Below, piece after piece: positions 2,152 to 29,614 of a stretch of DNA of 64,000 nt; the first letter of the stretch is position 1, and each line of letters starts with the position of its first letter. The translations under genes and the position numbers were made by a program. The notes beneath the pieces are model-generated. The model was not told the DNA's origin and did no database searches. It saw only the letters and a program-made list of their open reading frames with translations. The stretch spans positions 1 to 64,000 of IMG/VR virus record IMGVR_UViG_3300020186_000013. One strand, written 5' to 3'.

Positions 2152-4269
2152 CTACGCCTTCAACGCGGCGTCCGCCCGCTTGGCCAGCTCGCCCTGGAGG
2201 GACTCGGTCGTCCAAAACTCCAGTGCCTTCGGGTCGCCCGCGTCGATGTCGTACGGGTTACTCTTCATCCCGTACACCCACAACAGATCGTCGACGATCT
2301 TGGTGCGGGACTTGTACCAGAGCGTGGGGAACTTCGCCCGTGTCAGGTTGAACACCTGCCCGAAGATGTCGCGGATCTCGGTCTCCGCGAACGGTGCGGT
2401 GCGGAGTTGGACGACGTGCCGCAGAGCCCGGATGTTCGCCGTCATGCCGATCTCGTTCGCCTGCCCGTTGGGGGCAATGCGACGGATAGCACTGGTGATG
2501 GCCTTCCGCTTGTCGAAGTTGAACGAGTCGTCCGGCACCCACTTCAAATCCTCGCGGAGCGTGCCTGCCGGGATGTTCGCCCACGCCGCCAGGCACTTCG
2601 ACTCGTTCGGCTTGGCCGTCAGACCCGCCTCGGCCGGGGCGTGCGGGAACTTCGGGTTCGGCTTACGCAGGCCGAGCTTGCACTCGGTCAGGTACACCAG
2701 GTCTTCGATGCACGACAGCCCTTCGAGCCACAGATCCTTCACGGGATTGAGCAGATTGCTCCAGACCAGGTCGATGCTGTCCAGGCGGCAGTACCGCCCC
2801 GACGTCTGCGAGTACGCCCACCCGGCCCGCTGACGCACCTGCTCGTGGGTGTTACCACACCAGAACGCAAGGCCGTGACAGCGAACATAGATAATCCCGT
2901 CCTGCGTCTTCGGACAGTACACCTTCCCGTGATAGTCCTCCTCCCAGAAGTGTTGGGTCTTGATGATCGACACCGACTTACGACTCACACTGACGACCCA
3001 ACTCGGCTTCGTGTGCCGGATGATGCCATCGCGGAAGTCTCGTGTGACGCCGGAGCGGTCGTCTTTTCGCACGTTGGCACACAGACCGAGTCGCCCTAAG
3101 AGAACCTGCCACTGACCGGCGGCGTGCTCCGTTTCGCAGTACAAGGCTTGGTGGCCGTTCGAGTGATGTACGGTCCCGTCACCAGACATTGCCGCAGCGA
3201 AGAAGCCACGAAGAAGTCGCCGACTCAGATTGAACAGATCAGTAACGAAATGCCGCTCCTTGTTGTTAGGCCCGATCATCTGTTTAGCCCACGCCGACAA
3301 CTCACCGTCCGAGATCGTGAAATACTCGATCCGGCTGTCAGAGTACGGGAAATACTCGATCCGGCTGTCAGAGTACGGGCCGTGGTGCCGCCACCGGCTC
3401 CCAAACAACTCGCTCATGAGCGAGTGCAGTGCCGGCAGGTTGCCGACCTTCGACTGGTTGATGACGCACTGGTTCGGACGCTCGACGGAAAAAGTACCGT
3501 CCGTTGCCATCCATCCCAACCACTCCATCAGGCGGTAAGCGTCGTAGGTGTGTTCACCGATCTGGAACTGCTCGCGGTCGTCTTCGGCCGCAAATGAAAC
3601 TTCGTGGTCGATGACGATGGGTTTGCGAAACACCTCCGAGATCGGCACCTTCTCGGAGTAAAGAGCCACGTTCTCGGCCAGCGACAGCCCACGAGCCCGA
3701 CGCGGATTGACGCGAGCCGCCCACAACAAGTGGTCGGGCGTCATGCCGGGCGACACCATCTGCCCGGTCTTCCAACCGAGTAACTTCCCGTCGTAGTCGA
3801 AGCTGTGGACGCTGGCAGGAGTCTGCCACTTAGCCTTCCTGGTGTCCGGGTTCAGCGTCAGGAGTTCATCAGCGACGGTCAAGTCTTCGATCTTCTTCCA
3901 ACCGCTGTTCGTGTAGACTTCCGTGCCCTGCTCGTAGCAGTAGACCCGCGAGCAGTCCGTCACGAGGAAGTTGATGTTGCAGTGCTCGAACACCGAGCCG
4001 TGGCCCGTGTCGAAACAGCTCTCCAGGTTGGCCTTCACCGACCGAACCTTGCTCACGTTCGCGTTCTTGCCCACCACCAGGCTCTTGTAGCACAGCTTGG
4101 CGTACATGGAGCACAGCGACTCGCCGCCGGAGATGCCCGCCACGCGGGCGGCCAGGTAGTCGTCCCAGAAGTCCATCTGCTTGGTCTTCTCCAGGTACGC
4201 CTTCACACCCGGCTCGTGGATCTCCGTGAACCCGGTCAGGAACACTTCCGGCTTAACGAGCTGACCCAT
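2152..4269 (-). CDS. thyX: flavin-dependent thymidylate synthase ThyX, intein-containing
   Basis: GHGSVFEH, spliced SRVY|THEQVRQRAGWAYSQTSGRY, ANIRALRHVVQLR, AETEIR. Confidence 0.9.
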   Translation of the reverse strand: MGQLVKPEVFLTGFTEIHEPGVKAYLEKTKQMDFWDDYLAARVAGISGGESLCSMYAKLCYKSLVVGKNANVSKVRSVKANLESCFDTGHGSVFEHCNINFLVTDCSRVYCYEQGTEVYTNSGWKKIEDLTVADELLTLNPDTRKAKWQTPASVHSFDYDGKLLGWKTGQMVSPGMTPDHLLWAARVNPRRARGLSLAENVALYSEKVPISEVFRKPIVIDHEVSFAAEDDREQFQIGEHTYDAYRLMEWLGWMATDGTFSVERPNQCVINQSKVGNLPALHSLMSELFGSRWRHHGPYSDSRIEYFPYSDSRIEYFTISDGELSAWAKQMIGPNNKERHFVTDLFNLSRRLLRGFFAAAMSGDGTVHHSNGHQALYCETEHAAGQWQVLLGRLGLCANVRKDDRSGVTRDFRDGIIRHTKPSWVVSVSRKSVSIIKTQHFWEEDYHGKVYCPKTQDGIIYVRCHGLAFWCGNTHEQVRQRAGWAYSQTSGRYCRLDSIDLVWSNLLNPVKDLWLEGLSCIEDLVYLTECKLGLRKPNPKFPHAPAEAGLTAKPNESKCLAAWANIPAGTLREDLKWVPDDSFNFDKRKAITSAIRRIAPNGQANEIGMTANIRALRHVVQLRTAPFAETEIRDIFGQVFNLTRAKFPTLWYKSRTKIVDDLLWVYGMKSNPYDIDAGDPKALEFWTTESLQGELAKRADAALKA
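2851..3939 (-). mobile_element. intein (363 aa) with in-frame LAGLIDADG endonuclease in ThyX
   Basis: Starts CYEQGTEVYT, block B TPDH, LAGLIDADG-like WLGWMATDG and FFAAAMSGDG, ends VYCPKT...FWCGN, +1 Thr. Confidence 0.9.
3319..3378. repeat. perfect 30-bp tandem duplication (PYSDSRIEYF x2)
   Basis: GAAATACTCGATCCGGCTGTCAGAGTACGG twice, 3319-3348 and 3349-3378. Confidence 0.95.
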
Positions 4270-6824: not shown

Positions 6825-7258
6825 TGGTCCGTCCTAAAGGCCACCCCCACATAACAGCGGAAGGCGTCTTCCGGAGACAGGTCCGTACACTCGTGTCCCA
6901 ACACGAGGACCGCTGACTTGGGTGGCAGCGGGTCAATAGACCGTAAAGATTCCGCCGCCGCCAGACCAATCTGGATGCCCAGACCCCAGATCTCCGACAG
7001 TGACCGCCCTTTCGTGCGGTAGGCAAAGATCGGGATGCGGACATACTGATCCGAGTTCGTCACCCCCCACCTAATGTTCTCGATCAAGACCGGCGTCTGC
7101 GGGACCACGTACCGCCCGACGCGGCTCACCTCGGCGACGTTGAACACGCTGCCGTGCGGGTTCACGCCGTGGAGCAACTCACGCTCAATGACGTACGACG
7201 GCGGTACGCCGGTAATCAGGTTGGGCAGTACGTTGCACCACTGCACGTCGAACTTCAT
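6821..7258 (-). CDS. hypothetical protein
   Basis: ATG at 7258 coupled to GT2 stop. Confidence 0.65.
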   Translation of the reverse strand: MKFDVQWCNVLPNLITGVPPSYVIERELLHGVNPHGSVFNVAEVSRVGRYVVPQTPVLIENIRWGVTNSDQYVRIPIFAYRTKGRSLSEIWGLGIQIGLAAAESLRSIDPLPPKSAVLVLGHECTDLSPEDAFRCYVGVAFRTDQ

Positions 7259-8043
7259 GCCTTCCTCGTGATCTCGCAGTCGAACTTTTGGTGGGACAGG
7301 TCCGGCGGGCCGGGCCTGTAGTCCGCCCACAGTGCTTCAATTTTGCCGCTCTCGCCTCGGCGAGGGGCCTTGGACTCTCGGCCCGCATCGTCGGCGTTAA
7401 TGGCGATGCCCTGTCGATAGTTGACCAGGTGCCGCCCACGCTGTTCAAGCAGCTCGCCCAGGATGCGATCGCCTGCTGTGTGGTGCAGTTCAGGGAACGG
7501 GTAGTTCCACTCGTGCAAGAACGATGTCCGAGCCGCCCACCACGCCCCCTGCGGGAACGTGAAGACGTGGTGCCTATTCACGGGCGTCATGCACCAGGGC
7601 TGGGCGTTGATGCCCAGGTGCTGGTTGCCCATCAGCCCCATCGTGTACCGGGCACCCACGACCGTCGAGCCACCGCTGATGTGGTTCTTCGACAGATACG
7701 TCGACACCACCTCAAACACGTACTTGTTGGTGCCAAGCAGATAACTGTCGTCGTCGAACCACATCACGTTCTCGGCGACCGGGTTCGCCGTGTCGTAGAA
7801 CATCCGTCGCATCAGCGGGTACTTGCCGACGTTGCGATCGGGCGTGTACGTGATGAGCGGGCACAACTTCTTGATCGTCCCGCCCAGCAGGTCCACCGTG
7901 GTACAGGTCTCCTCGCCACAAGCGTTGAGGCCGATCCGCACGTCGGCAATGAACTTCCAGTTGGCGTGCTGAATGAGTGAAAGCAACACACGCCGAGCAA
8001 GATCGGCGTGCGAGCCGTACAGGAGTACGCAAACGGAGAACAT
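7255..8043 (-). CDS. GT-A fold (family 2-like) glycosyltransferase
   Basis: N-terminal FSVCVLLYG strand, NVG, DxD motif in MWFDDDSY, C-terminal GDRILG. Confidence 0.7.
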   Translation of the reverse strand: MFSVCVLLYGSHADLARRVLLSLIQHANWKFIADVRIGLNACGEETCTTVDLLGGTIKKLCPLITYTPDRNVGKYPLMRRMFYDTANPVAENVMWFDDDSYLLGTNKYVFEVVSTYLSKNHISGGSTVVGARYTMGLMGNQHLGINAQPWCMTPVNRHHVFTFPQGAWWAARTSFLHEWNYPFPELHHTAGDRILGELLEQRGRHLVNYRQGIAINADDAGRESKAPRRGESGKIEALWADYRPGPPDLSHQKFDCEITRKA

Positions 8044-14078: not shown

Positions 14079-17000
14079 TCAGATCTTCTCGCCCCACCAG
14101 GTACAGATCTCCTTGTCGGACCCCAGGTAGTACGGCCCCCGGCCCTCGATCGGCGTGCCGTTGAGGCGGGTCGGGTAGATGGGGACCTGGGTGAGGCTCC
14201 ACGGGATCAGCACGTTGTGGATGTAGTCGCGATACTTCTTCTTGTTGCGGATCAGCAGTGCGTCATGGATCTGCAACTGCCAGTAAAAAATGTACTCACC
14301 GAACTCGGGCAGCAGTCGCTCCCGAGCCTGGTGAAGTACGGACAACCAACGGTCGACGAAGTCCGCAATCATGGACTGGATCGGGAAGTTCATCGCCTGC
14401 CGCTCGAACTCACCCTCCAGCTTGGAGTCGGAGGTCGCCGGGAAGCGACGCATCCGACCAAAGCAGTTGCACAGCCACCCGACGTTGACGGCCCGGAAGC
14501 GGGCCTCCGCGAAGAAGTCTTGCAACTCCGGGTACATCGCGAACACCGCGTCGATGACCGCCTGAGCGTCGTCGACGGACACCTCGGGCTCGCCCGGCTT
14601 CCGCTGCTCCTTCGCCGCCAGTGCAATCGCCTTGGCCTGGCGACCATACGCGATGCCGAAAATCACCGTCTTGGCGATGTTACGCAGGTGAACCTTGCCG
14701 ATCGACGCCAAGCCCGGCTTCGACGGGTGGCACGACAGCTTGAACGCCATCTTGGCGACCGAGCTGTGGATATCGTGGAACTCCGGGTGCGGGTACGGGC
14801 ACGTCTTGCACTTCTTCAGGGGTGCCCCGGCCTCGCCGTGCGTGCACCGCATGCCGTCGATCGAGTACCCGTCCTCGGCGTACGTCAGTGCCCGAGCCGT
14901 GTGGTCGATCATGAGGGTCGAGTTCGACATGATGGCCATGCCCCGAAGCTCGGCCCCCATGAGGTCCCGCTCGCCCAACTCCCACTCGTCCTCGGCGGTC
15001 GTCGCCACCCAGCCCTCGACCTTCTTGCCGTCCTTCCAGAACGTCTGTGGTGTCAGGGTGCCGGGCGGCGGCGACCGGAAGATCGACCGCAGCTTGTGCT
15101 TGTACAGCGTCTTGCCGTCGTCCCCGACCAGCAGCCGCTCGTAGTCCGGGTCGCGGGTCTTGCTGATGTTCTGCAAGTTCGGCCGCGACGACTTCCAGCG
15201 GCCGGTTTCCGCCGTCGGGTACAGGTGGGTCCGGACCATACCGTCGTCGTCGATGCACCCAGCGATACCCTCCGTGAACTCGTACTCCTCCCCGCCCTCG
15301 TCGTCAAGCAAGATGTTGCCCTGCTCGTCCTTCTGGGTGATCCAGTTCTGGTTCGCATCCTCCTCGGGCGTACGGAGCAGGCTCTTGAGCACCTGATCCA
15401 GGAAGCGGTAATCGCGGATCATGTTGATCTGATCCGCCACCTCCGGGTTCTCCTGGGCCAAGATCGCCAGGACCGCTTTGCCCGTGCCCGGCGTGTGGTC
15501 GCGAGTCCGCCCCATGGCGACGATATCGCTCCACTTCTTGGGCGGCTTGTCAGTCGTCAGCAAGGGCTCCACCCGCAGGCACTTAGCACCCTTGGGCCGG
15601 AGGCGAATCGGCTCGCCGTCCTTAGTCACCTTGCCGTTGTACTCGACCCCGAACAGAACCTCCTTTACGTGTTGCACACTGCGGATGTTGAACTCCGGCC
15701 ACCCGAACTCGTCGACAATAGCCTGCTCCAGGCTCGCCCGTGCGGTCGAGAAGTCACGGGTCAACTTCTTCACCCGCTTGATGTCAACGAAGATGCCCTG
15801 CTGGTGGATCTCCAGGATGATCGGCAGCGTCAACATGCTGCCGCCGAACGGCTCCCACACGCAGTTGAACTCGTAGTCCTCGTCGAGGTAGCCCATCGCC
15901 GTGACCGCGATGCGGCGGGTGGCGTCGGCGTCATAGTTGCCATACGGCACCAGGATGTCGTCCGGAATCTTGCCGTACCCTTCGAGGGCCTTCCGCTTGA
16001 TCTTCAACTGCTTACACAGCTCGACGACCGAGTCCTCCAGGGCGATGTCATACCGGGGACAGGTGGTGTACCGCATCGCCACCGACTCCAGTCCCAGCAA
16101 CGCTGTCTCCTCGATCGAGTGAATCATCATGCCGGTATCGAGCCCGCCCTCGCCCTGCATACACCGAACCCAGAACGGCGTGCCGTCCTCGGCGTCCTCG
16201 GTCGGAATGAAGAAACCCTTGCGGAAGTCGAACCCGTGGTAGACGAGGTGCTCCAAGTCAGCCACGAAGAAGTGGCCCACGATCCGGTACTGGTTGACGA
16301 ACTTCGTGGTCGCCTTGGCCAGCCGAGCGGTGGCGTCCTTGCCGTTCTTGTCCTTGAAGCAGCACTTGCCCTCGGTATCGTTGAGGACGAAGCAGATCGC
16401 CTTCTTGTGCCCCCACGACATCTGGATGGTGCGGACGTACGAGTTAGAGTTGACCGGGTGGGTGCCCTCCCACTCGGCGTCGATGGCGATGATGTTCATG
16501 CCTGGCGGCTCGTTCGCCAGGTCGGCAGCCGCCTCCTCCTCCCACGCCAGGTACTCTTCCCACGACGTACACTTGCGGTGGTCGATGTCGGTCTCGGTTA
16601 GCCCCGTCTTGGCCTCCTTGAGCACGAACGCGAACCGGCCGCACCCGCGTTCCAACGTCCGGCGGGACGCAGGGTCACGGGCCACCTGAGCAGGGTGTAC
16701 GACCGTCATGCACATCGCCTGGTGGATGATGGGCTCGCTGTCCTCATCGAAGTGAACCGGGAACTCGAACGGGACCAGCCGCCCCTCCATGTATCCGACA
16801 CCAGCCTTGCTGCCCAGGAGGGCTTTCGAGGCATCGGCCCCAAGCAGGAGGATGTAGTCCGGCTTGACGATGCGGAGTTCCTGGTGGAGCAGCGGCATGC
16901 AGTCCGCGATCCACCCCGACTTGAGCGTGGTCTGGTCGTCGGGGGGCATGAACTTCACCAAGCTGGTGACGTACCAATGGGCCATCTCCTGGCGACTAAT

Positions 17001-17552
17001 GCGGGCCTCGATCATGGCCTCCAACAGGATCTCTCCCGTCGAACCAACCAGGTAGCGGCACTTCTCGCTCTCCTCCTTCCACGGCATCTTGCCAATGACC
17101 ATCACCTTCGCAGGGTGCGGGCCGTCGGTCACCGGTGGCTTTACGTACGGGTCCATCTCAGACTGGATGAACGCCGCCATGTGCTGACCCCAGATGTGTC
17201 CGGGGACAAACGTCACCTCCTTCGGTGGCTGACCAGGGCGGACCTCGACCCGCAACGGGAACAGGGGCTCCCGGAGTGCCCGGCGGTAAAGCGTGTCCAA
17301 CCGCTGGGACGGCCGGTAAATGAGCTTCCCGGTCTTCTTCTCCTTCATGAAGACAGTCTTCAGCTCGGGCGGGTCGTCCTTCTCCTCGTGGTCTGTGAGC
17401 CGCAGGAAGTTCGGCCCCGGCGGGGGCATGCCGGGGGCGTTCCAGTGGTACGCCCCCCGGTTCAACATCATCTTCCGCTGGGTACGGACGACCTTCTTCT
17501 GAAGTTCCGCACCCAGAGTCACGACCCGACGCTTGAGCCGTTCAATTTCCAT
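14079..17552 (-). CDS. polA: family A DNA polymerase with N-terminal uracil-DNA-glycosylase-like domain and 3'-5' exonuclease
   Basis: UDG-like VMVIG...LVG.TG..L...ELRIVKP.YILLLG...VHPA; exo IAIDAE; TGRWKSSRPNLQNI; motif A DLMGAELR, motif B RNIAKTVIFGIAYG, motif C LQIHDAL. Confidence 0.92.
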   Translation of the reverse strand: MEIERLKRRVVTLGAELQKKVVRTQRKMMLNRGAYHWNAPGMPPPGPNFLRLTDHEEKDDPPELKTVFMKEKKTGKLIYRPSQRLDTLYRRALREPLFPLRVEVRPGQPPKEVTFVPGHIWGQHMAAFIQSEMDPYVKPPVTDGPHPAKVMVIGKMPWKEESEKCRYLVGSTGEILLEAMIEARISRQEMAHWYVTSLVKFMPPDDQTTLKSGWIADCMPLLHQELRIVKPDYILLLGADASKALLGSKAGVGYMEGRLVPFEFPVHFDEDSEPIIHQAMCMTVVHPAQVARDPASRRTLERGCGRFAFVLKEAKTGLTETDIDHRKCTSWEEYLAWEEEAAADLANEPPGMNIIAIDAEWEGTHPVNSNSYVRTIQMSWGHKKAICFVLNDTEGKCCFKDKNGKDATARLAKATTKFVNQYRIVGHFFVADLEHLVYHGFDFRKGFFIPTEDAEDGTPFWVRCMQGEGGLDTGMMIHSIEETALLGLESVAMRYTTCPRYDIALEDSVVELCKQLKIKRKALEGYGKIPDDILVPYGNYDADATRRIAVTAMGYLDEDYEFNCVWEPFGGSMLTLPIILEIHQQGIFVDIKRVKKLTRDFSTARASLEQAIVDEFGWPEFNIRSVQHVKEVLFGVEYNGKVTKDGEPIRLRPKGAKCLRVEPLLTTDKPPKKWSDIVAMGRTRDHTPGTGKAVLAILAQENPEVADQINMIRDYRFLDQVLKSLLRTPEEDANQNWITQKDEQGNILLDDEGGEEYEFTEGIAGCIDDDGMVRTHLYPTAETGRWKSSRPNLQNISKTRDPDYERLLVGDDGKTLYKHKLRSIFRSPPPGTLTPQTFWKDGKKVEGWVATTAEDEWELGERDLMGAELRGMAIMSNSTLMIDHTARALTYAEDGYSIDGMRCTHGEAGAPLKKCKTCPYPHPEFHDIHSSVAKMAFKLSCHPSKPGLASIGKVHLRNIAKTVIFGIAYGRQAKAIALAAKEQRKPGEPEVSVDDAQAVIDAVFAMYPELQDFFAEARFRAVNVGWLCNCFGRMRRFPATSDSKLEGEFERQAMNFPIQSMIADFVDRWLSVLHQARERLLPEFGEYIFYWQLQIHDALLIRNKKKYRDYIHNVLIPWSLTQVPIYPTRLNGTPIEGRGPYYLGSDKEICTWWGEKI

Positions 17553-23487: not shown

Positions 23488-24470
23488 ACTGCGTTGTCGA
23501 GCGTCCGGAGGTGTACCGAGTAAGCGTCAACCTCTTCCGCACTCTTGAAGAACGACGACGGCAAGAAACCGCCCTCGGGGCGTGGGGCAGCGACTTCGCC
23601 GGACCACACCTCGTACAAGAACCGAACATACCGTCGCGTAGCTGCCATGGTCCCCTTGTGTGCCCCGCCAGCTGCCGCGTGTGCCCGCCACAGGAAGTGC
23701 TGCGGCCGAGTCCTATCCGTAACGCCGGTCCGCCCCAGCCACGACCGCATCAGCACCGTCAACCAATCGAAGTTCCGATCCCTGTCGTTGAAGTTCGTCA
23801 TCCAAGCGTGCATATTCTTGGGCGTCAGTCCCAGGTGCACATACAGCCGGCTCAGCCGGTGGGGCCGGGTCGGGTGCCGGAACCACCTCGGGTCGACGAT
23901 GCGGGCGGCAAGGAGGCACGCCGCGTCGTGGTCGCCCGACGGAATGAACGACACCGCCGGCCACAGCGGGTGGTAGCGGAAGATCCGCCGCACCTGCTCG
24001 TCGACCTCACCCTTGTTGTCTTTCAACGCCGCGATGATGGCGTACGTCGTGTAGTCCTTGTCACTCAGGTCGTGCCAGCACCCCGATGGCAGGACGGCGT
24101 ACTGCTGCCACAGGTGTGACAGCACGCGGGCCGGGCTGCCCCGGTCCTCGGCCGTGGGGCACACCATGGGGCTGCCCAGGACAACCCGCTGCCCGCGAGA
24201 CAGCGACTTGTTACGCACCCGCATATGGTGCAGGTACACGATCAACTCTGCGTTCGACGGCACCCCGAGGAGTCGGATCAGTCGAACCGACCCCAAGTTC
24301 ACGCCCAGCCACTTCAGCTTGTCGAAAAAGACGGCGACGGTACAGCGGGAGTTCTCCCCCACCGCACCGTCGTGCCCGTACCAGACGTGGCCCTGGTCGT
24401 CCGTGTGCAACCGCAGCAAGTCCACGACCGACGCGACGTCTTCTTCAAGCGGGACAAGGGGCATGGTCAC
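23484..24470 (-). CDS. Nop/IS110 C-terminal-domain protein (Tas-like)
   Basis: HPLWPAVSFIP.GD..AACLLAARIVDPRWF...SRLYVHLGLTP and H.G..AA.RR.VRFLYEVW; no DEDD RuvC recognised. Confidence 0.55.
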   Translation of the reverse strand: MTMPLVPLEEDVASVVDLLRLHTDDQGHVWYGHDGAVGENSRCTVAVFFDKLKWLGVNLGSVRLIRLLGVPSNAELIVYLHHMRVRNKSLSRGQRVVLGSPMVCPTAEDRGSPARVLSHLWQQYAVLPSGCWHDLSDKDYTTYAIIAALKDNKGEVDEQVRRIFRYHPLWPAVSFIPSGDHDAACLLAARIVDPRWFRHPTRPHRLSRLYVHLGLTPKNMHAWMTNFNDRDRNFDWLTVLMRSWLGRTGVTDRTRPQHFLWRAHAAAGGAHKGTMAATRRYVRFLYEVWSGEVAAPRPEGGFLPSSFFKSAEEVDAYSVHLRTLDNAV

Positions 24471-26599
24471 GCCTTCAGTTGGATCACCCGGTCGAACGCG
24501 GCCTTCAGCCCCTCGGCGTGGGTGATCACAATGAGTTGCTGCTTGCCCTTCACCTTCTTCGAGAAGTAGGTGATTGCCTGGGCAAGGAACTTGATGTTCT
24601 CGTCGTCCAAGTTGGCCGTCGGTTCGTCAAGCACGAGCATACCAAGACCCGACCGGTAGAGCGAGTTCACTGTGATCCAGAAGGCCACCGAAAGCACGCC
24701 CTTCTGCCCGCCCGACAGGGCCTCGGCCCGGTGCGGCGGGTCGCCCGGCTTGTGCACCAGGAAACTCAGTTCGGTGTCGGTCTCAACCCAGAACGGTGCC
24801 CCGAACAACTCCAACCCCTTGTTGACGTCCCCCTCCATCCGAGTCAGGTTGGCCTGGGCCACGGCCTGGGGCAGGGCCTGTTTGTGGAAGATGTCGCGGG
24901 TCAGTTGCAGGACCTTGGTCATCTCCTTCAGCTTGCGGCTCCGCTTCATGCGGGCCTTGGCCTGCTCGTACTGCGTCTTCTTGGCGGCGATCTGCGTGTT
25001 GATGCCGACCAGCTGGCCCTCCAGGTTGGCGATCTCCAGCTCGGCCGTGCGATGCTCCTTCAAGCGGATTTTGGCCTTCACCAACACCTCGTCGAGTACC
25101 TGGTTCTCGGACGCCGTCGTCAACAACTCGCGGATGTGACTGTCAACCGCAGCGAGCTGGGCCTCCTTCCGCGTCACCAACTTGGTCAGCCCCTCCCACT
25201 GCTTCTTCGCCCCCTCGGTCACCTCGGCGTTCTTCTCGTAGACCCGGATCGTCTCGGCCAGCTCCTCCTTGTCGCCGTCCGGGTACTGGAGGTCCTTGAT
25301 CGCCGCAAGGGCCTCCTCGTTCTCCTTGACCGCTGCGTCGTTGGTCGCCTTCCACTCGTTGTACTTGGCAAGGCTGGACTCGTACTCCTTCCAATGGGAG
25401 ATCAAAGATTGCAACTCGCTGATCTGGCCGGGGCGGTCGTTGTTGATGCCCCGTAGGTGCTTCAAGTGCGACTCAATCGCCGCGATCTCGGTGCTGCACG
25501 TCGGGCAATACATCATGCCCTTCTGGGAGAACAACGCGAGCGTCTTCTTGGCCTCCATCAGCTCCTGCGAGTACGCCGCCAGCTTCTGCTCGGCGTTGAC
25601 CGGCGGGGCCTTGGGCTTGAACGGCGGCTCCTTCTTCACCGTCAACAGCTTCTTACGTTCGAGCAACTTCTGCTTGCGGGCCTGCTGCTTCTCGCACTGC
25701 TCGAACGCCGCCAAGGCCGAGCGGGCCATGGTGGCGGGCTGGGCCATCGCGTCCGTCGCCTTCTTCAACCCCTCGTACGCCTTCTCCTGCTTCTTCGCGT
25801 TGGTGGTGACGCCACGCAACTCCTCACCTAGCGTGTCCGACTCCAGCTTAAGCGGCCCGAGGCGGGTCAGAGCCGCCGCCTGGCGTTCCGCCCGACGCAG
25901 GATCTCCTCGGCGTTCTCCTTGCGGGTCGGTTCGAGCTGCTTCTCCTTCTCCAAGGTGATCCGCAGGTTGATGTCGTCCCTCTGGTCCTTCAGCTCGCCG
26001 ATCTCGTGCGTCAACTCGTCCGTGTTGTCGACGGCCTGGTCGATGGCCTCGCGGTCCTTGGCGATCACCGACGCGAGCACGTCCTGCACCGTCTCGCAGT
26101 GCTCGGTGCCGTTCAAGGCCATGTACGCCTTGGCCCGGATGGCCGGCGTCGTGTGCAGGAAGTCGTCGAGGGCACCATCGACGGTCCCCGGCTGTCGCTT
26201 GAACACGGCGAAGTCAAGGATCTTCTTGTCGATGCCCAGACGCCGCAGCCGCTCCGTGCCTTCCTTGTCCGACGTGATGAGCTTCTCGTCGTTGACCTTC
26301 AGCTCGTACTTCGCCGGCCGCAGGGACCGTTTGATCGCGATGGTAGCGTCGTCGTGAACGATGGTCACCCGGATCGCCGACTCGTCGTCCTTGGTCGAGC
26401 GGTTGTTGATGACGTCCGTCCGGACGCCGTCGAACCGGCTAAAGTCGTTCGTGATGGCCGCGTAGATGGCGTCCACCAGGGTCGACTTGCCGGCCCCGTT
26501 GTCGGCCAAGATCACGTTGGCCCCGCGATCGAACTCGAAATCGTGCCGCCCGTAGAACGGCCCGATGTTCGTCAACGCCGCCTTTGTGATGTACATCAC
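24467..26599 (-). CDS. Rad50/SbcC-like SMC ATPase
   Basis: DNGAGKST, coiled coil with CPTC zinc hook, LSGGQ, LVLDEPT, ITH. Confidence 0.92.
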   Translation of the reverse strand: MMYITKAALTNIGPFYGRHDFEFDRGANVILADNGAGKSTLVDAIYAAITNDFSRFDGVRTDVINNRSTKDDESAIRVTIVHDDATIAIKRSLRPAKYELKVNDEKLITSDKEGTERLRRLGIDKKILDFAVFKRQPGTVDGALDDFLHTTPAIRAKAYMALNGTEHCETVQDVLASVIAKDREAIDQAVDNTDELTHEIGELKDQRDDINLRITLEKEKQLEPTRKENAEEILRRAERQAAALTRLGPLKLESDTLGEELRGVTTNAKKQEKAYEGLKKATDAMAQPATMARSALAAFEQCEKQQARKQKLLERKKLLTVKKEPPFKPKAPPVNAEQKLAAYSQELMEAKKTLALFSQKGMMYCPTCSTEIAAIESHLKHLRGINNDRPGQISELQSLISHWKEYESSLAKYNEWKATNDAAVKENEEALAAIKDLQYPDGDKEELAETIRVYEKNAEVTEGAKKQWEGLTKLVTRKEAQLAAVDSHIRELLTTASENQVLDEVLVKAKIRLKEHRTAELEIANLEGQLVGINTQIAAKKTQYEQAKARMKRSRKLKEMTKVLQLTRDIFHKQALPQAVAQANLTRMEGDVNKGLELFGAPFWVETDTELSFLVHKPGDPPHRAEALSGGQKGVLSVAFWITVNSLYRSGLGMLVLDEPTANLDDENIKFLAQAITYFSKKVKGKQQLIVITHAEGLKAAFDRVIQLKA

Positions 26600-27780
26600 C
26601 CCTCCAGTTGTTTAACACGCCAAGCCTCGATCTCGCGACGGACCTCTTCGGCACTCGTCTTGTTGATTAGAAGCTCGACCAGTTCTGTCACCTCGACCGT
26701 CAACCCCGACATGCCGTTGTCGACCAGGAACTGCTCGACGTACGGCCGGAACGTGTTCTCCAGGGACGCCACGCGGCCCTTGACGTCGACGACCGTGCTC
26801 TTGCCGTCGACCTTCTCCGGGCGTACCTCGCTCGGGAACAGGTGCACCCGGTCGCCGACCGCCTTCTGGATGCGTCGCCACGCCCCAGTCACCGACGCCG
26901 AGTACGCTACCCGCATGAGCGGCCGGAGCATGTCCTCCGGCAGGTTCGCGTTGGCACCCCGAGCGTACGCCTCGTCGATGAACCGCTCGATCTCTTCCAG
27001 GAACTCGGTCATGTCCTCCTCGGATAAGACCGACGCCGTGAGCATCTGCCGGGTGACCAGCGGGATACGGCGGAACGACCCGTCACTGCGGAAGGCGACG
27101 AAGAACTTGTCCTGGGGCTCGATGATGCTCTGGACCGACATCGACCCCGGATTGGTCACCAGGATCTTCTGCCCGTCCTTGCCGATCAACGTCTTGACGA
27201 TGGACTCGCCGTGGTAATCGCCGGTTGCCACGCGAACGATCGGCAGCGGGATGTCTGCGGCCGACATCTGGGGCGACGCGATGCTCCCCATGAAGTCCCC
27301 CCAGCACTGGTGCAGGAACAGCCCAGTCGCCTCACCGGGGATCTCGTTGGTCAGCCAGTCCTGGATTTCCGCCGCCGGGGCGTAGTCGTGGCCGGCCCAC
27401 ACAAAGTCGCCGATGGTGACGACCTTCTTGTGGACGTGCTGCACCATCGCGTCGTTGTCGAACAGCCACGGCAGCACGCCAGGACCGGCGTGGTCGTGGT
27501 TGCCCTGGATGAACAGGAAGTTGACGCCCCCGCCCGCCAGCTCCTTGAGCTTCATGCGGAGGGGGGTGACCGCCATGCTCAGGTTGCGGGCACGGTCCAG
27601 GGAGTCGCCGAGGTCGACGACCGTCTGGACAGTGGGGCTGTTGGTCGCGTAGTCGATGACCTGCTGCAATGCGTGCAGCGAGTCGTCAATGCCGCGACTC
27701 GGGTAGCCGCCCCCGCAGTGGAGGTCGGCGTAGAGCACGGCGATGTCTTTCGGCTCGGTGGTAGCCTTCGTCTTTGCCAT
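26596..27780 (-). CDS. Mre11/SbcD-like metallophosphoesterase nuclease
   Basis: ADLH, GDSLD, GNHD, LHQ, GDYH, NPGS. Confidence 0.9.
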   Translation of the reverse strand: MAKTKATTEPKDIAVLYADLHCGGGYPSRGIDDSLHALQQVIDYATNSPTVQTVVDLGDSLDRARNLSMAVTPLRMKLKELAGGGVNFLFIQGNHDHAGPGVLPWLFDNDAMVQHVHKKVVTIGDFVWAGHDYAPAAEIQDWLTNEIPGEATGLFLHQCWGDFMGSIASPQMSAADIPLPIVRVATGDYHGESIVKTLIGKDGQKILVTNPGSMSVQSIIEPQDKFFVAFRSDGSFRRIPLVTRQMLTASVLSEEDMTEFLEEIERFIDEAYARGANANLPEDMLRPLMRVAYSASVTGAWRRIQKAVGDRVHLFPSEVRPEKVDGKSTVVDVKGRVASLENTFRPYVEQFLVDNGMSGLTVEVTELVELLINKTSAEEVRREIEAWRVKQLEG

Positions 27781-27785
27781 GAATC

Positions 27786-27801
27786 TAGAATCCAGTTATT
27801 A
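27786..27801. promoter_or_regulatory. degenerate palindromic site TAGAATCCAGTTATTA
   Basis: Gene junction; variant of recurrent 16-mer. Confidence 0.45.
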
Positions 27802-28332
27802 GGTCCTGATCTTCTTCACGATCTCTGTCGTACTCATGCCGTCGAGCATCGGGGCGAACAGCACGCACCCGCCGTTCTTGATGACGAAGTCCTCGCCGAC
27901 GATGTCCTCGTCGTCGTAGTAGCCGCCGCCCTTGATGAGCAGGTCGGGCCTAATCGTCTCGATCAGCTGGAGAGGCGTCGACTCCTCGAAGCCCGTCACC
28001 CAGTCCACGCCCTTGACCTGCCGCACAGCCTCGGCCCGCTGCTTGAACGCGACGATCGGTCGGCCCTCGCCCTTGAGCTGCCTCACCGAGTGGTCGGAGT
28101 TCAACGCGACCACGAGCATCATCTTCTCGGGGTCGAGCCACGTCCGCGTCTTGGCGTACCGCAGCACGGCGAGGTGCCCGGCGTGAAGTAGGTCGAAGCA
28201 CCCGTTGACGACGACGACGAAACCATCCATCGCCTTCCATTCCTTCACCCGGTTCTTGAGCGGCCCGTCCTGGTGCCACATGCAGACATTCTCGTCCCTC
28301 AGCATCTCACAGTAACGACTACCCGTGGTCAT
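27799..28332 (-). CDS. rfaE2: D-glycero-beta-D-manno-heptose 1-phosphate adenylyltransferase (HldE domain II)
   Basis: NGCFDLLHAGH, VVALNSD.SVRQLKGEGRP, RPDLLIKGG, STTEIV. Confidence 0.85.
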   Translation of the reverse strand: MTTGSRYCEMLRDENVCMWHQDGPLKNRVKEWKAMDGFVVVVNGCFDLLHAGHLAVLRYAKTRTWLDPEKMMLVVALNSDHSVRQLKGEGRPIVAFKQRAEAVRQVKGVDWVTGFEESTPLQLIETIRPDLLIKGGGYYDDEDIVGEDFVIKNGGCVLFAPMLDGMSTTEIVKKIRT

Positions 28333-29369
28333 CTCTTCTCCTGGTAAGCCTTCCCGAGATCTTCCGTCGTGAGTTTGTAAACCCCCTGATAGGCCACCGC
28401 CAGCGACGCAGCCAAGTTAGCCCGCTTCACGGCACCGTCAATATCATCGCGGTCCGACTCGGACGCCCCCACGAACCAGTCCGCCATCGCCGCCAGGAAC
28501 GTGTCCCCGGCCCCCGTCGTGTCGAGAAGGACTCGGGGGGTCGTCGGCGGCATTCGGGTCAGTAACCCGGTGTCCGTTCCGAAGATGGCACCGTACTGCC
28601 CGAGCGTGATGATCACGTACTCGAACGAAATGTCCGCGTCCTTGGCCATCTTCCGGTATAGGGTGTCAAACAACTGGAAGTGGGACTCCTCGATGTCGAC
28701 CGGCCTATACCGCCGCAACTCTTTGGCCAGCTTGGTGCCCTCCAAGCCACTGAATGCGATCGCCTCATCCAGGTTGCACTTGAAGATCGCCCGGTTGTGA
28801 CTGTACTTATGCCACCCCCGAGGGTCTCGCGGCGGGTCGATCAAGACGGTCAGGTGGTAGAGGCGGGCAAACGACAGCACGGCCCGAACGAACCGTTCCG
28901 ATAGGAAGCCCTTGTTGTAGTCCGAGAACACGATCACAGGTCGACAGCTCTCGACGGCGACGGTCACCTGCGTTAATGCCTCGTCGAACCAGTTGTCGGC
29001 CGGGCTGACGAGCATCTCGCGATCCAGCCGCATGAGTTGCCCGGACCTGGTGACAAATCGGTGCTTTACCGTCGTGACGTGCTCCGGCCAGGCGGCCAGC
29101 CAAGCGTCGATCTTGTTATCCGCACACAACTGCTGCACGATCTTCCCGTGCGTATCGTCGCCAACGAGTCCGAACAGCATCACCCGCCGGTCGAGACCCG
29201 CCAAGTTCGCCGCGACGTTGGCCGCACCGCCCAGGTTGTACGTCGTGCCCTCGTCCTTGAGGACGAGGACGTGATCATGCTCGGGCGACACCCCGCTCAC
29301 CGTGCCGCTAGTCGTAACGTCGAGCATCACGTCACCGATGACGATGACGTGCGGCTTCTCAGAACCCAT
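28329..29369 (-). CDS. rfaE1: heptose-7-phosphate kinase (HldE domain I, PfkB family)
   Basis: VIGDVMLD, LGGAANVAANL, TTVKHR, SDYNKG, DTTGAGDTF. Confidence 0.85.
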   Translation of the reverse strand: MGSEKPHVIVIGDVMLDVTTSGTVSGVSPEHDHVLVLKDEGTTYNLGGAANVAANLAGLDRRVMLFGLVGDDTHGKIVQQLCADNKIDAWLAAWPEHVTTVKHRFVTRSGQLMRLDREMLVSPADNWFDEALTQVTVAVESCRPVIVFSDYNKGFLSERFVRAVLSFARLYHLTVLIDPPRDPRGWHKYSHNRAIFKCNLDEAIAFSGLEGTKLAKELRRYRPVDIEESHFQLFDTLYRKMAKDADISFEYVIITLGQYGAIFGTDTGLLTRMPPTTPRVLLDTTGAGDTFLAAMADWFVGASESDRDDIDGAVKRANLAASLAVAYQGVYKLTTEDLGKAYQEKR

Positions 29370-29380
29370 GCTTACTCCTG

Positions 29381-29614
29381 CTATGTTGAGTCGTTGAAGT
29401 ATCTTCGGATGGCGTTGCGGACGTCGGACATCCTGGCCACCCGCGTCGCGGAGGCGTCCTCGCCCCGCTTACAGCGGTCGCACCGGCGTATCCTCTCCCG
29501 GTCGGGGGAGAGGAACTCTCGGCCGCACTTCATACAGTTACGCTTTCCCGGAACAGAAGCGTGGGGCATCTTGCCCGCACTGCCTTGACCGGGGTCGGGT
29601 CCTTCCGTGACCAT
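29381..29614 (-). CDS. small zinc-ribbon protein
   Basis: RNCMKCGREF.S....RRCDRC. Confidence 0.55.
   Translation of the reverse strand: MVTEGPDPGQGSAGKMPHASVPGKRNCMKCGREFLSPDRERIRRCDRCKRGEDASATRVARMSDVRNAIRRYFNDST

What the first reader, a model, noticed from the sequence alone, without database searches (positions are those of the whole stretch)
27799..29369. Phage-borne split HldE (ADP-heptose kinase + adenylyltransferase) at the head of the replication operon
Seen: rfaE1- and rfaE2-like genes sit directly upstream of Mre11/Rad50, and a GT2 lies in the same strand block at 7255. Established: these enzymes make NDP-heptose with GmhA/GmhB, which are not seen in this window. Inference: the phage makes an activated sugar for glycosylating DNA, virion proteins or the host surface.
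Basis: partly seen in the sequence, partly recalled or inferred. Interest (0 to 1): 0.6.

Follow-up and report, generated by a model that had tools for sequence, protein, structure and literature searches.

The report
Jumbo phage ADP-heptose gene pair
A 208-kb uncultured jumbo phage from microbial mats carries an intact two-gene kinase plus adenylyltransferase cassette for activating heptose, and elsewhere a strongly conserved heptosyltransferase-like enzyme that could use the product; phage copies of these enzymes are already known, so the pair is ordinary but its context is informative.

Summary
Window 28329-29369(-) encodes an HldA-like heptose-7-phosphate kinase. Window 27799-28332(-) encodes an HldC-like heptose-1-phosphate adenylyltransferase. 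Their coding frames overlap by 4 bases (ATGA), catalytic motifs are intact, and they sit directly upstream of mre11/rad50. Both score below NCBIfam's equivalog cut-offs.

"Head of the replication operon" is not shown. Nearly the whole genome is on one strand and no promoter is detectable. The pair is a present/absent cassette at a fixed site between a conserved Zn-ribbon gene and mre11.

No GmhA, GmhB or epimerase exists in the 208-kb genome, and none of 26 related jumbo phages has a GmhA-like gene, so the host must supply the missing steps. The probable hosts are Planctomycetota. In the Gemmataceae genomes searched, 30 of 31 have a GmhA-like gene and 29 of 31 an HldE adenylyltransferase domain.

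The key context lies outside the window. At genome 72.8-74.9 kb sits a GT9 (heptosyltransferase-fold) plus GT-A fusion, 45-55% identical across more than 120 metagenomic protein clusters. The "GT2 at 7255" is a paralog of its GT-A half.

Best reading: the cassette boosts ADP-D,D-heptose supply for phage-directed glycosylation. The acceptor is unknown; a virion protein is my guess. Phage HldE homologs are already known, so this is a new member of a known kind.

The parts
28329..29369 (-). [quoted passage not shown]
   Evidence: PfkB 1.7e-24; TIGR02198 9.3e-53 over positions 7-314/315 but 179 bits against a 345-bit cut-off. Best PDB hit is HldA 4e84. GGAANVA and DTTGAGD motifs are present, and every column invariant in a bacterial HldE/HldA set is kept. 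AGGAG lies 7 nt before the ATG.
27799..28332 (-). [quoted passage not shown]
   Evidence: CTP_transf_like 1.1e-14; TIGR02199 7.8e-44, 149 bits against a 181.5-bit cut-off. Best PDB hit is BpHldC 5x9q, 5.9e-25. HAGH, NSD, KG, ExTP, KGG and STT motifs are kept (against PMC7993394). Its start overlaps the kinase stop (ATGA).
29381..29614 (-). Conserved 77-aa Zn-ribbon protein; upstream boundary of the cassette insertion site
   Evidence: Contains CxxC...CxxC and gives weak Zn-ribbon Pfam hits. Its homolog sits right before the kinase in carriers and right before mre11 in non-carriers G011 and G009.
26596..27780 (-). Mre11-like nuclease; downstream boundary of the cassette
   Evidence: Metallophos 2.5e-5 and Mre11_Halo 8e-8. 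Syntenic in all relatives examined.
24467..26599 (-). Rad50-like ATPase
   Evidence: SMC_N 2.4e-20 and Rad50 NCBIfam models up to 7e-32.
7255..8043 (-).
   Evidence: No Pfam or NCBIfam hit. BLASTP to P0121 residues 446-662 gives 6e-24, 28% identity, shared WFDDDS. The protein language model's nearest clusters are GT2. Present in 26 of 26 related jumbo phages.

Best explanation
The two genes are a translationally coupled, vertically inherited accessory cassette. [quoted passage not shown]

1. The kinase phosphorylates heptose 7-phosphate at O1.
2. After removal of the 7-phosphate, the adenylyltransferase joins heptose 1-phosphate to AMP from ATP.
3. The phage encodes no isomerase (GmhA), phosphatase (GmhB) or epimerase (HldD). 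The substrate and the middle step must therefore come from the host, which is probably a planctomycete with its own heptose pathway.
4. The cassette would duplicate the host HldE function so that ADP-D,D-heptose supply stays high during infection.
5. The likely consumer is the phage's own GT9 (heptosyltransferase-fold) plus GT-A fusion enzyme, a hallmark of this jumbo-phage group.
6. The acceptor is not known. I rank a virion protein (fibre or baseplate region) first, the host envelope second and DNA third.

Shown: gene identity, motif integrity, cassette behaviour, absence of GmhA/GmhB, and presence and conservation of the GT9 fusion. Inferred: the substrate, the link between the cassette and the GT9 enzyme, the host, and the acceptor.
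For: Family and structure matches.

Conserved catalytic and substrate motifs: with PMC7993394.

Cassette behaviour:
- The order Zn-ribbon, kinase, NT, mre11, rad50, helicase, DnaB-like gene is kept in eight carriers.
- G011 and G009 have the Zn-ribbon gene next to mre11 with no pair.
- Kinase/NT divergence between carriers (27-45% identity) tracks Mre11/Rad50 (31-42%).
- Cassette kinases form one clade (SH-aLRT 99).
- In independent mat samples the locus is intact, with only synonymous changes.

Missing pathway steps:
- No SIS_2 (GmhA) or TIGR01656 (GmhB) match, and no epimerase family among the Pfam hits, anywhere in the genome.
- No SIS_2 in 26 relatives.

The GT9-GT-A fusion:
- Pfam GT9 above its gathering score.
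- The eight best structural matches are all GT9 heptosyltransferases, Z 18.6-23.5.
- The LGD catalytic Asp and the T-x-K-H-W lysine are conserved.
- Identity is 45-55% across the 120 best-scoring clusters.

Link between cassette and GT9: kinase and NT co-occur perfectly in 10 of 26 GT9-bearing jumbo genomes. One origin for all 16 jumbo-phage kinases is not rejected (p-AU 0.84).

Host lead:
- 10 of 19 genome hits are Planctomycetota MAGs, and one of them is a syntenic phage contig.
- Genomes of that MAG's family (Gemmataceae by its record title): HldE NT domain in 29 of 31 and a GmhA-like gene in 30 of 31.

Viral heptose enzymes have been shown to be functional, with the phosphatase typically missing in viruses (PMC11461863, reporting Tang et al. 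2024).
Against: - Both proteins score under the equivalog cut-offs.
- The cassette clade sits on a long branch and has clade-specific changes in the N-terminal sugar-lid region (SPEAP-VPV to SPEHDHVLV, LDRY to LDxTT, VKTR to VKHR) plus a ~35-aa insert. A shifted sugar-phosphate specificity is therefore possible.
- 16 of 26 GT9-bearing relatives, including six that are 98-100% complete, lack the pair. The GT9 enzyme does not need it.
- The pair lies 45 kb from the GT9 gene.
- WaaC Asp261 is not conserved in the GT9 domain, and GT9 donor specificity cannot be read from sequence.
- The host assignment rests on MAG co-binning and gene sharing only.
- Nothing identifies the acceptor.
Confidence: 0.55

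Rival explanations
1. DNA glycosylation: the pair supplies NDP-heptose for post-replicative heptosylation of phage DNA. This would explain why it sits inside the replication/recombination gene array.
For: - The cassette is embedded between a Zn-ribbon gene and mre11/rad50, next to helicase, primase and a UDG-PolA fusion.
- There is a precedent: a phage cluster with a HAD-APH enzyme, a cytidylyltransferase and a GT-B makes mono- and di-heptosyl-5hmC (bioRxiv 10.1101/2023.12.21.572611).
- UDG-PolA fusions occur in phages with glycosylated thymidine (PMC13697223).
Against: - No thymidylate-synthase-like hydroxymethylase, cytosine methyltransferase or TET/JBP dioxygenase turned up among the proteins scanned against Pfam: predicted proteins of 100 aa or more plus the missed GT2 ORF. 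The genome has ThyX and a dCTP deaminase instead.
- No T4-type DNA glucosyltransferase was found.
- The PolA matches only T5-like polymerases in the phage collection, and its UDG motif A reads GKMPW.
- The GT9 gene's conserved neighbours lie downstream of the baseplate genes, not the replication genes.
- The genome assembles to near identity from several ordinary short-read data sets.
Confidence: 0.12
2. Host envelope remodelling: phage-made ADP-heptose and the phage GTs alter the host's LPS core or another surface glycan. The effect would be to block superinfection or change receptor availability, as proposed for cyanophage LPS-gene islands.
For: - All characterised close structural relatives except TibC are LPS core heptosyltransferases.
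- Cyanomyoviruses carry kinase/NT/isomerase genes in LPS-type clusters.
- PVC bacteria carry unfused GT9-like and GT-A-like neighbours 33-41% identical to the phage domains.
Against: - The fusion is a highly conserved core gene of apparently lytic jumbo phages with terminal repeats, which is unusual for a superinfection-exclusion function.
- No membrane-associated or lipid-carrier genes were seen next to it.
- The neighbourhood is shared with unannotated, probably structural, genes downstream of baseplate J.
Confidence: 0.2
3. Different substrate: the pair belongs to the HldA/HldC superfamily clade but activates another sugar phosphate, or makes a CDP/UDP-sugar. In that case it is unrelated to the GT9 enzyme.
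For: - Scores are below the equivalog cut-offs.
- The clade sits on a long branch with lid-region substitutions and an insert.
- No GmhA/GmhB is encoded.
- 16 of 26 GT9-bearing relatives do without the pair.
Against: - The rfaE models beat every other PfkB or cytidylyltransferase model by more than 100 bits.
- All docking-predicted heptose-1-phosphate motifs of BpHldC are kept (PMC7993394).
- The Arg five residues before the xxGxSTT motif, which confers CTP/UTP promiscuity, is absent here (Val), pointing to ATP.
Confidence: 0.13

Closest known systems
Bacterial split HldA/HldC (Burkholderia, Neisseria type) and bifunctional HldE (E. coli, Salmonella)
   Same: Same two domains in the same order and the same catalytic motifs. 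These are GGAANVA and GAGD with the Asp264 equivalent in the kinase, and HxGH and STT in the transferase. The best solved relatives are HldA 4e84 and HldC 5x9q.
   Different: - Only 28-36% identical to bacterial homologs, and under the equivalog cut-offs.
- Clade-specific lid substitutions and a ~35-aa insert.
- No gmhA, gmhB or hldD partner genes in the genome.
- Located in a phage replication module.
Viral NDP-heptose biosynthetic enzymes (Tang et al., Science 2024, as summarised in PMC11461863) and cyanomyovirus kinase/NT/isomerase clusters (P-SSM2, S-CAM3, S-SSM7)
   Same: Phage-encoded heptose kinase and nucleotidyltransferase with the phosphatase missing. At least 495 IMG/VR contigs encode a kinase relative.
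   Different: - Cyanophages usually add a GmhA-type isomerase and place the genes in an LPS-like island beside carbamoyltransferase, epimerase and tail-fibre genes.
- Here there is no isomerase, and the pair is a cassette between a Zn-ribbon gene and mre11.
- The cassette kinases form their own clade.
Phage DNA hypermodification cluster making heptosyl-5hmC (bioRxiv 10.1101/2023.12.21.572611)
   Same: A phage-encoded sugar-phosphate enzyme plus a cytidylyltransferase-fold enzyme plus a GT-B transferase yield a heptose adduct.
   Different: - That system uses a HAD-APH bifunctional enzyme, a T4 beta-GT-like transferase and a methyltransferase/TET route to 5hmC.
- None of these was found here.
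TibC/AAH bacterial autotransporter heptosyltransferases (BAHT)
   Same: - GT9-type GT-B fold (Z 20.9).
- The donor is ADP-D,D-heptose, which is what a pathway without an epimerase would give.
- A four-cysteine metal finger is inserted in the C-lobe. The phage family has four invariant Cys at a comparable place.
   Different: - The N-terminal beta-barrel of TibC has no counterpart (the structural alignment starts at TibC residue 96).
- The Cys spacing differs (C-x5-C-x22-C-x14-C against C-x2-C-x15-C-x11-C).
- The phage protein carries an extra GT-A domain.
- WaaF and a Veillonella GT9 score as well or better.

Membership tests
HldA / HldE kinase domain (TIGR02198, heptose-7-phosphate kinase) | Full-length match to the family model above the curated equivalog score | tested here: not met
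   Aligned over model positions 7-314 of 315 at E 9.3e-53, but 179.4 bits against a cut-off of 345.
HldA / HldE kinase domain (TIGR02198, heptose-7-phosphate kinase) | PfkB/ribokinase signatures and catalytic residues (GG-x-ANVA; D-x-x-GAGD base; N-x-x-E) | tested here: met
   GGAANVA, DTTGAGDT and CNLDE are present. All 36 columns invariant in the 14-sequence HldE/HldA alignment, which includes the window's kinase, are therefore kept in it. The catalytic role of Asp264 and Glu198 is from my memory of the HldE literature.
HldA / HldE kinase domain (TIGR02198, heptose-7-phosphate kinase) | Closer to heptose kinases than to other PfkB kinases | tested here: met
   179 bits for rfaE_dom_I against 59 for ribokinase. 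The best PDB hit is HldA at 2.9e-19, against fructokinase at 3e-9.
HldA / HldE kinase domain (TIGR02198, heptose-7-phosphate kinase) | [quoted passage not shown] | not testable with these tools
   Needs an enzyme assay. Lid-region substitutions leave room for doubt.
HldC / HldE adenylyltransferase domain (TIGR02199) | Match above the curated equivalog score | tested here: not met
   149 bits against a cut-off of 181.5, E 7.8e-44, model positions 3-143 of 144.
HldC / HldE adenylyltransferase domain (TIGR02199) | [quoted passage not shown] | tested here: met
   HAGH, MLDGMSTT, VNG (Thr to Val), NSD, KG, EsTP and KGG, all aligned to BpHldC 5x9q. The motif list comes from PMC7993394 and rests on docking, not on a bound structure.
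Complete ADP-heptose pathway (GmhA, HldA, GmhB, HldC, HldD) | Isomerase, phosphatase and epimerase encoded alongside | tested here: not met
   No SIS_2 or TIGR01656 match in the genome. No SIS, HAD or epimerase family appears among the Pfam hits of the proteins scanned. No SIS_2 in 26 relatives.
GT9 heptosyltransferases (the partner enzyme outside the window) | Pfam PF01075 above its gathering score, and a GT-B fold closest to solved GT9 members | tested here: met
   33.6-35.9 bits against a cut-off of 22. AF2 model pLDDT 86.8. The top eight VIA matches are all GT9 (Z 18.6-23.5).
GT9 heptosyltransferases (the partner enzyme outside the window) | Uses ADP-heptose as donor | not testable with these tools
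   The catalytic Asp (LGD) and the phosphate-binding Lys (KHW, WaaC K192) are conserved, but WaaC D261 aligns to Val.
BAHT (TibC/AAH) protein heptosyltransferases | N-terminal beta-barrel, beta-hairpin thumb, and a four-Cys iron finger | tested here: inconclusive
   No beta-barrel: the model aligns to TibC residues 96-397 only. Four invariant Cys follow the C-lobe, but with a different spacing. I could not inspect the model coordinates.
Phage DNA hypermodification systems (hm-pyrimidine plus DNA glycosyltransferase; SP15-like T-modification) | Hydroxymethylase or methyltransferase/TET route to a hydroxymethyl base, plus a DNA glycosyltransferase | tested here: not met
   None appears among the Pfam hits of the proteins scanned. 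ThyX and a dCTP deaminase are present instead. The PolA is not close to SP15-like polymerases.

The most novel reading that the evidence does not exclude
This uncultured jumbo-phage group, probably infecting Planctomycetota, heptosylates its own virion proteins (fibre or baseplate-distal proteins). The agent would be a GT9-GT-A fusion with a TibC-like metal finger. Some lineages, including this one, carry their own HldA/HldC cassette to guarantee the ADP-D,D-heptose donor. If so, this would be, as far as my searches show, the first phage protein-heptosylation system.
Probability: 0.25. Interest if true: 0.7.

Novelty: new member of a known kind. Interest (0 to 1): 0.42.

Why it matters
The enzyme pair by itself adds one more lineage to the already documented viral NDP-heptose enzymes. 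What is worth keeping is the context.

- An entire, apparently uncultured jumbo-phage group, with no match in 50,697 deposited phage records, has a heptosyltransferase-fold enzyme as one of its best conserved genes.
- About two in five of the 26 genomes searched carry heptose-activation genes.
- These kinase genes are compatible with a single ancient origin.

This points to heptose-based glycosylation as a long-standing part of these phages' biology. It also gives a concrete, testable donor-plus-transferase pair for phage glycobiology, and it offers a host lead (Planctomycetota) for a group with no isolates.

Tried and rejected
- **DNA similarity to known phages.** No match. tblastn of the GT9 fusion against the phage collection also gave no match.
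- **The search for related loci with the single kinase.** It found nothing, so an alignment was needed.
- **Promoter/terminator scan to test 'head of the operon'.** Counts were at chance level.
- **Annotating the GT9 gene's neighbours.** Pfam, PHROGs, PDB sequence searches and the protein atlas gave nothing solid. The only leads were weak fibre-like ones below 0.9.
- **Independent acquisition of heptose kinases by related jumbo phages.** The quick tree suggested this. I rejected it as a claim because an AU test does not reject a single clade, and the constrained tree is 31 lnL units better. Long branches make either reading unsafe.
- **SP15-like T-hypermodification link through the UDG-PolA fusion.** Not supported.
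- **Bacterial context of the unfused GT9-like and GT-A-like genes in a Chthoniobacteraceae chromosome.** Uninformative.
- **Reads.** Only assembled contigs of DNA runs were available, so nothing can be said about expression.
- **The large representative protein search.** Not used, because the word search sufficed.
Full report
**What is there**

The window is the first 64 kb of a 208,145-bp IMG/VR virus record. It is one contig, CheckV estimates 93% completeness, and GC is about 61%. Almost all of my 226 predicted genes are on the minus strand.

At the stated coordinates there are two minus-strand ORFs.

- **ORF 28329-29369 (346 aa).** It matches PfkB (1.7e-24). It aligns over nearly the whole of TIGR02198, the heptose-7-phosphate kinase domain of HldE, at 9.3e-53 and 179 bits. 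The next kinase family, ribokinase, reaches only 59 bits.
- **ORF 27799-28332 (177 aa).** It matches the cytidylyltransferase-like family and TIGR02199, the heptose-1-phosphate adenylyltransferase domain, at 7.8e-44 and 149 bits.

Both scores are below NCBI's equivalog cut-offs (345 and 181.5 bits). These are therefore clear relatives but not certified equivalents. The best solved relatives are Burkholderia HldA (4e84, 2.9e-19) and HldC (5x9q, 5.9e-25).

The kinase has an AGGAG 7 nt before its ATG. The transferase start overlaps the kinase stop (ATGA), a layout typical of translational coupling.

**Are they likely active?**

The kinase keeps GGAANVA and DTTGAGDT. It also keeps all 36 columns that are invariant in an alignment of Salmonella HldE, bacterial HldA/HldE and four viral relatives. 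These include the Asp264 and Asn195/Glu198 equivalents. The catalytic roles of those residues are from my memory of the HldE literature.

The transferase keeps HAGH and the C-terminal STT motif. It also keeps the NSD, KG, ExTP and KGG motifs, and TNG as VNG. These were predicted by docking to bind heptose 1-phosphate in BpHldC (PMC7993394). The arginine five residues before the xxGxSTT motif, which confers CTP/UTP promiscuity, is a valine here. ATP is therefore the likeliest nucleotide.

Two SNPs seen in other samples are both synonymous.

There is a caveat. The viral clade shares substitutions in the N-terminal lid region (SPEAP-VPV to SPEHDHVLV, LDRY to LDxTT, VKTR to VKHR) and a ~35-residue insert. 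A shifted sugar specificity cannot be excluded.

**Position and inheritance**

Directly downstream lie Mre11-like and Rad50-like genes. They are followed by two unknown genes, a helicase, a DnaB-like gene, a primase-like gene and a 1157-aa UDG-PolA fusion. Upstream there is no break. Same-strand genes continue with gaps of 11-76 nt, and the promoter and terminator scan is at chance level. "Head of the operon" is therefore not established.

Comparison is more informative. Eight metagenomic or IMG/VR relatives have kinases only 27-36% identical, or 74% in one close relative. All eight keep the order small Zn-ribbon gene, kinase, transferase, mre11, rad50, helicase. Two complete or near-complete relatives (G011, G009) have the Zn-ribbon gene next to mre11 with no pair between them.

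The pair is thus a present/absent cassette at a fixed site. Its divergence between carriers (kinase 27-36%, transferase 31-45%) tracks that of Mre11 and Rad50 (31-42%). The cassette kinases form one clade (SH-aLRT 99) on a long branch. That pattern fits long vertical inheritance with losses.

**The missing pathway steps**

No GmhA-type (SIS_2) or GmhB-type match exists in the genome. I also scanned the proteins of 100 aa or more against Pfam, plus seven that spanned locus boundaries and one ORF my gene caller had missed. No SIS, HAD-phosphatase or epimerase family turned up. None of 26 related jumbo genomes has a SIS_2 gene either.

The phage alone therefore cannot make ADP-heptose from sedoheptulose 7-phosphate. 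This agrees with the report that viral heptose enzyme sets lack the phosphatase (PMC11461863).

**The likely consumer**

The Pfam inventory revealed a rich glycan toolkit outside the window.

- A GT-D-like gene (genome 76321-77235).
- A double GT2 (74773-76317).
- A 667-698-aa protein (72810-74906) whose N-terminal half hits GT9, the heptosyltransferase family, above Pfam's gathering score.
- Further GT2 genes.
- A sulfotransferase.
- A UDP-glucose dehydrogenase.
- A TOD1/MUCI70-like protein.

An AlphaFold model of the GT9 protein has pLDDT 86.8. It shows a GT-B domain whose eight best structural matches are all solved GT9 heptosyltransferases: Veillonella GT9 at Z 23.5, WaaF at 21.0, TibC at 20.9 and WaaC at 18.6-19.0. 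It also shows a C-terminal GT-A domain (Z 15-17).

The catalytic LGD aspartate and the KHW lysine (WaaC K192) are conserved across the family. WaaC D261 is not.

This fusion is 45-55% identical over 94% of its length across the 120 best-scoring of 362 matching protein clusters, many on contigs of 180-240 kb. It occurs on at least 79 IMG/VR loci. It is absent from 50,697 deposited phage records. It is a hallmark of an uncultured jumbo-phage group.

It is, however, a paralog of the fusion's GT-A half (6e-24, shared WFDDDS) and is present in 26 of 26 relatives.

**Link between cassette and GT9**

Among 26 jumbo genomes with the fusion, exactly ten have a kinase, and the same ten have a transferase. 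Among genomes at least 90% complete the figure is 5 of 14.

In these ten the two genes take three forms:

- fused, like HldE (G012, G013, G018, G019);
- adjacent (G010, G015);
- far apart (G020, G022, G025, G026).

A quick tree placed these kinases in several positions. An AU test nevertheless does not reject a single clade of all 16 jumbo-phage kinases (p 0.84), and the constrained tree is better by 31 log-likelihood units. I therefore do not claim repeated acquisition. A single old gain followed by rearrangement and loss is compatible, with the usual caution about long branches.

The GT9 enzyme clearly does not depend on the cassette, because six 98-100% complete relatives lack it.

**Host**

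The virus occurs in microbial-mat metagenomes from at least eight studies. In a scan of species-representative genomes, 10 of 19 hits to the fusion are in Planctomycetota MAGs and 3 are in Verrucomicrobiota.

The best hit, in a Gemmataceae MAG, is a phage-syntenic contig. Others look like bacterial unfused GT9-like and GT-A-like genes.

In 31 genomes of that MAG's family (Gemmataceae by its record title), 29 have an HldE-type transferase domain and 30 have a GmhA-like gene. A host able to supply heptose 7-phosphate and the phosphatase step is therefore plausible. This host assignment is an inference from binning and gene sharing.

**Acceptor**

*DNA.* The position in the replication module and a published heptosyl-5hmC system speak for it. 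Against it, no hydroxymethylase, methyltransferase/TET or DNA glucosyltransferase was found, and ThyX is present.

*Virion.* In relatives the GT9 gene's conserved neighbours are g103-g100 upstream and g93-g92 downstream. The GT-D and GT2 genes are an insertion peculiar to this virus. This block lies downstream of baseplate J (96402-98054). That placement is weak support for a virion (fibre) target.

*TibC resemblance.* TibC uses ADP-D,D-heptose and has a four-Cys iron finger. The phage family has four invariant cysteines after the C-lobe. It has different spacing and no TibC beta-barrel.

**Comparison and verdict**

Phage-borne HldA/HldC genes are well known. They occur in cyanomyoviruses and huge phages, on at least 495 IMG/VR contigs, and viral heptose enzymes have been shown to work (PMC11461863). 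The pair is a new, divergent member of a known kind. The useful addition is its pairing with a lineage-defining GT9-GT-A enzyme and the cassette behaviour.

No alternative genetic code was used. 

Noticed in passing
window 2152-4269 (-): A ThyX thymidylate synthase is interrupted by an intein-like insert (Hint_2 and LAGLIDADG_3 hits between the Thy1 halves).
   Followed up: no
window 14079-17552 (-): A 1157-aa family-A DNA polymerase has an N-terminal UDG-superfamily domain. Motif A reads GKMPW rather than a GEAPG-type motif, while an HPA motif B is kept, so the glycosylase may be inactive as in N4-like fusions. In the phage collection only T5-like polymerases match.
   Followed up: partly
genome 72810-77235 (outside the window; L003:8810-13235): Three consecutive glycosyltransferase genes lie here: GT-D-like, a double GT2, and a GT9-GT-A fusion. 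The first two are absent from 78 related loci and look like an insertion specific to this virus.
   Followed up: yes
genome about 160-205 kb (L007-L010): Further glycan genes occur here: GT2 at 160019-160912, 174354-175334, 179136-179927 and 204394-205209; a sulfotransferase at 162159-162968; a UDP-glucose dehydrogenase at 172950-173888; and a TOD1/MUCI70-like protein near 203 kb. A sulfated, uronic-acid-containing glycan is conceivable.
   Followed up: partly
genome 142656-145772 (L192) and other ORFs among those of alignments A2-A4: The genome also encodes bacterial-type RNA polymerase beta (Rpb2_6, 9.5e-55) and beta-prime (Rpb1_2, 5.3e-28) subunits. Further hits are a tubulin/FtsZ-family protein, Cpn10, a sigma-70 region 3 hit, class II RNR, a radical SAM protein and a matrixin-type peptidase; a PG-binding domain was also hit, on an unlocated ORF.
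   Followed up: no
window 29496-29593 (-): ARAGORN calls a 98-nt tRNA-Arg(TCT) inside the conserved Zn-ribbon ORF. This is probably a false call, because the ORF's protein is conserved in relatives. A tRNA-Arg(TCT) and a tRNA-Met called in an intergenic gap lie at genome 166077-166226, and a tRNA-Gly call at 69164-69248.
   Followed up: no
L001:7824-9734 and L255:10974-11579: Mobile-element genes sit at the edges of the module in relatives. One is a TnpB-like (Cas12f1-like_TNB) gene just upstream of the Zn-ribbon gene in L001. The other is an HNH endonuclease between the mre11-like gene and rad50 in L255.
   Followed up: no
L213 / L254 (Chthoniobacteraceae MAG, 593-kb contig): A bacterial chromosome carries an unfused GT9-like gene and, two genes further on, a GT-A-like gene. 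They are 32-33% identical to the two halves of the phage fusion, in a four-gene island of unknown function.
   Followed up: partly
window, one of the ORFs in alignment A1 (not located): A dCTP deaminase-like protein (2.1e-32), a terminase large-subunit ATPase (GpA_ATPase, 1.7e-5) and an RNase H are encoded in the window.
   Followed up: no
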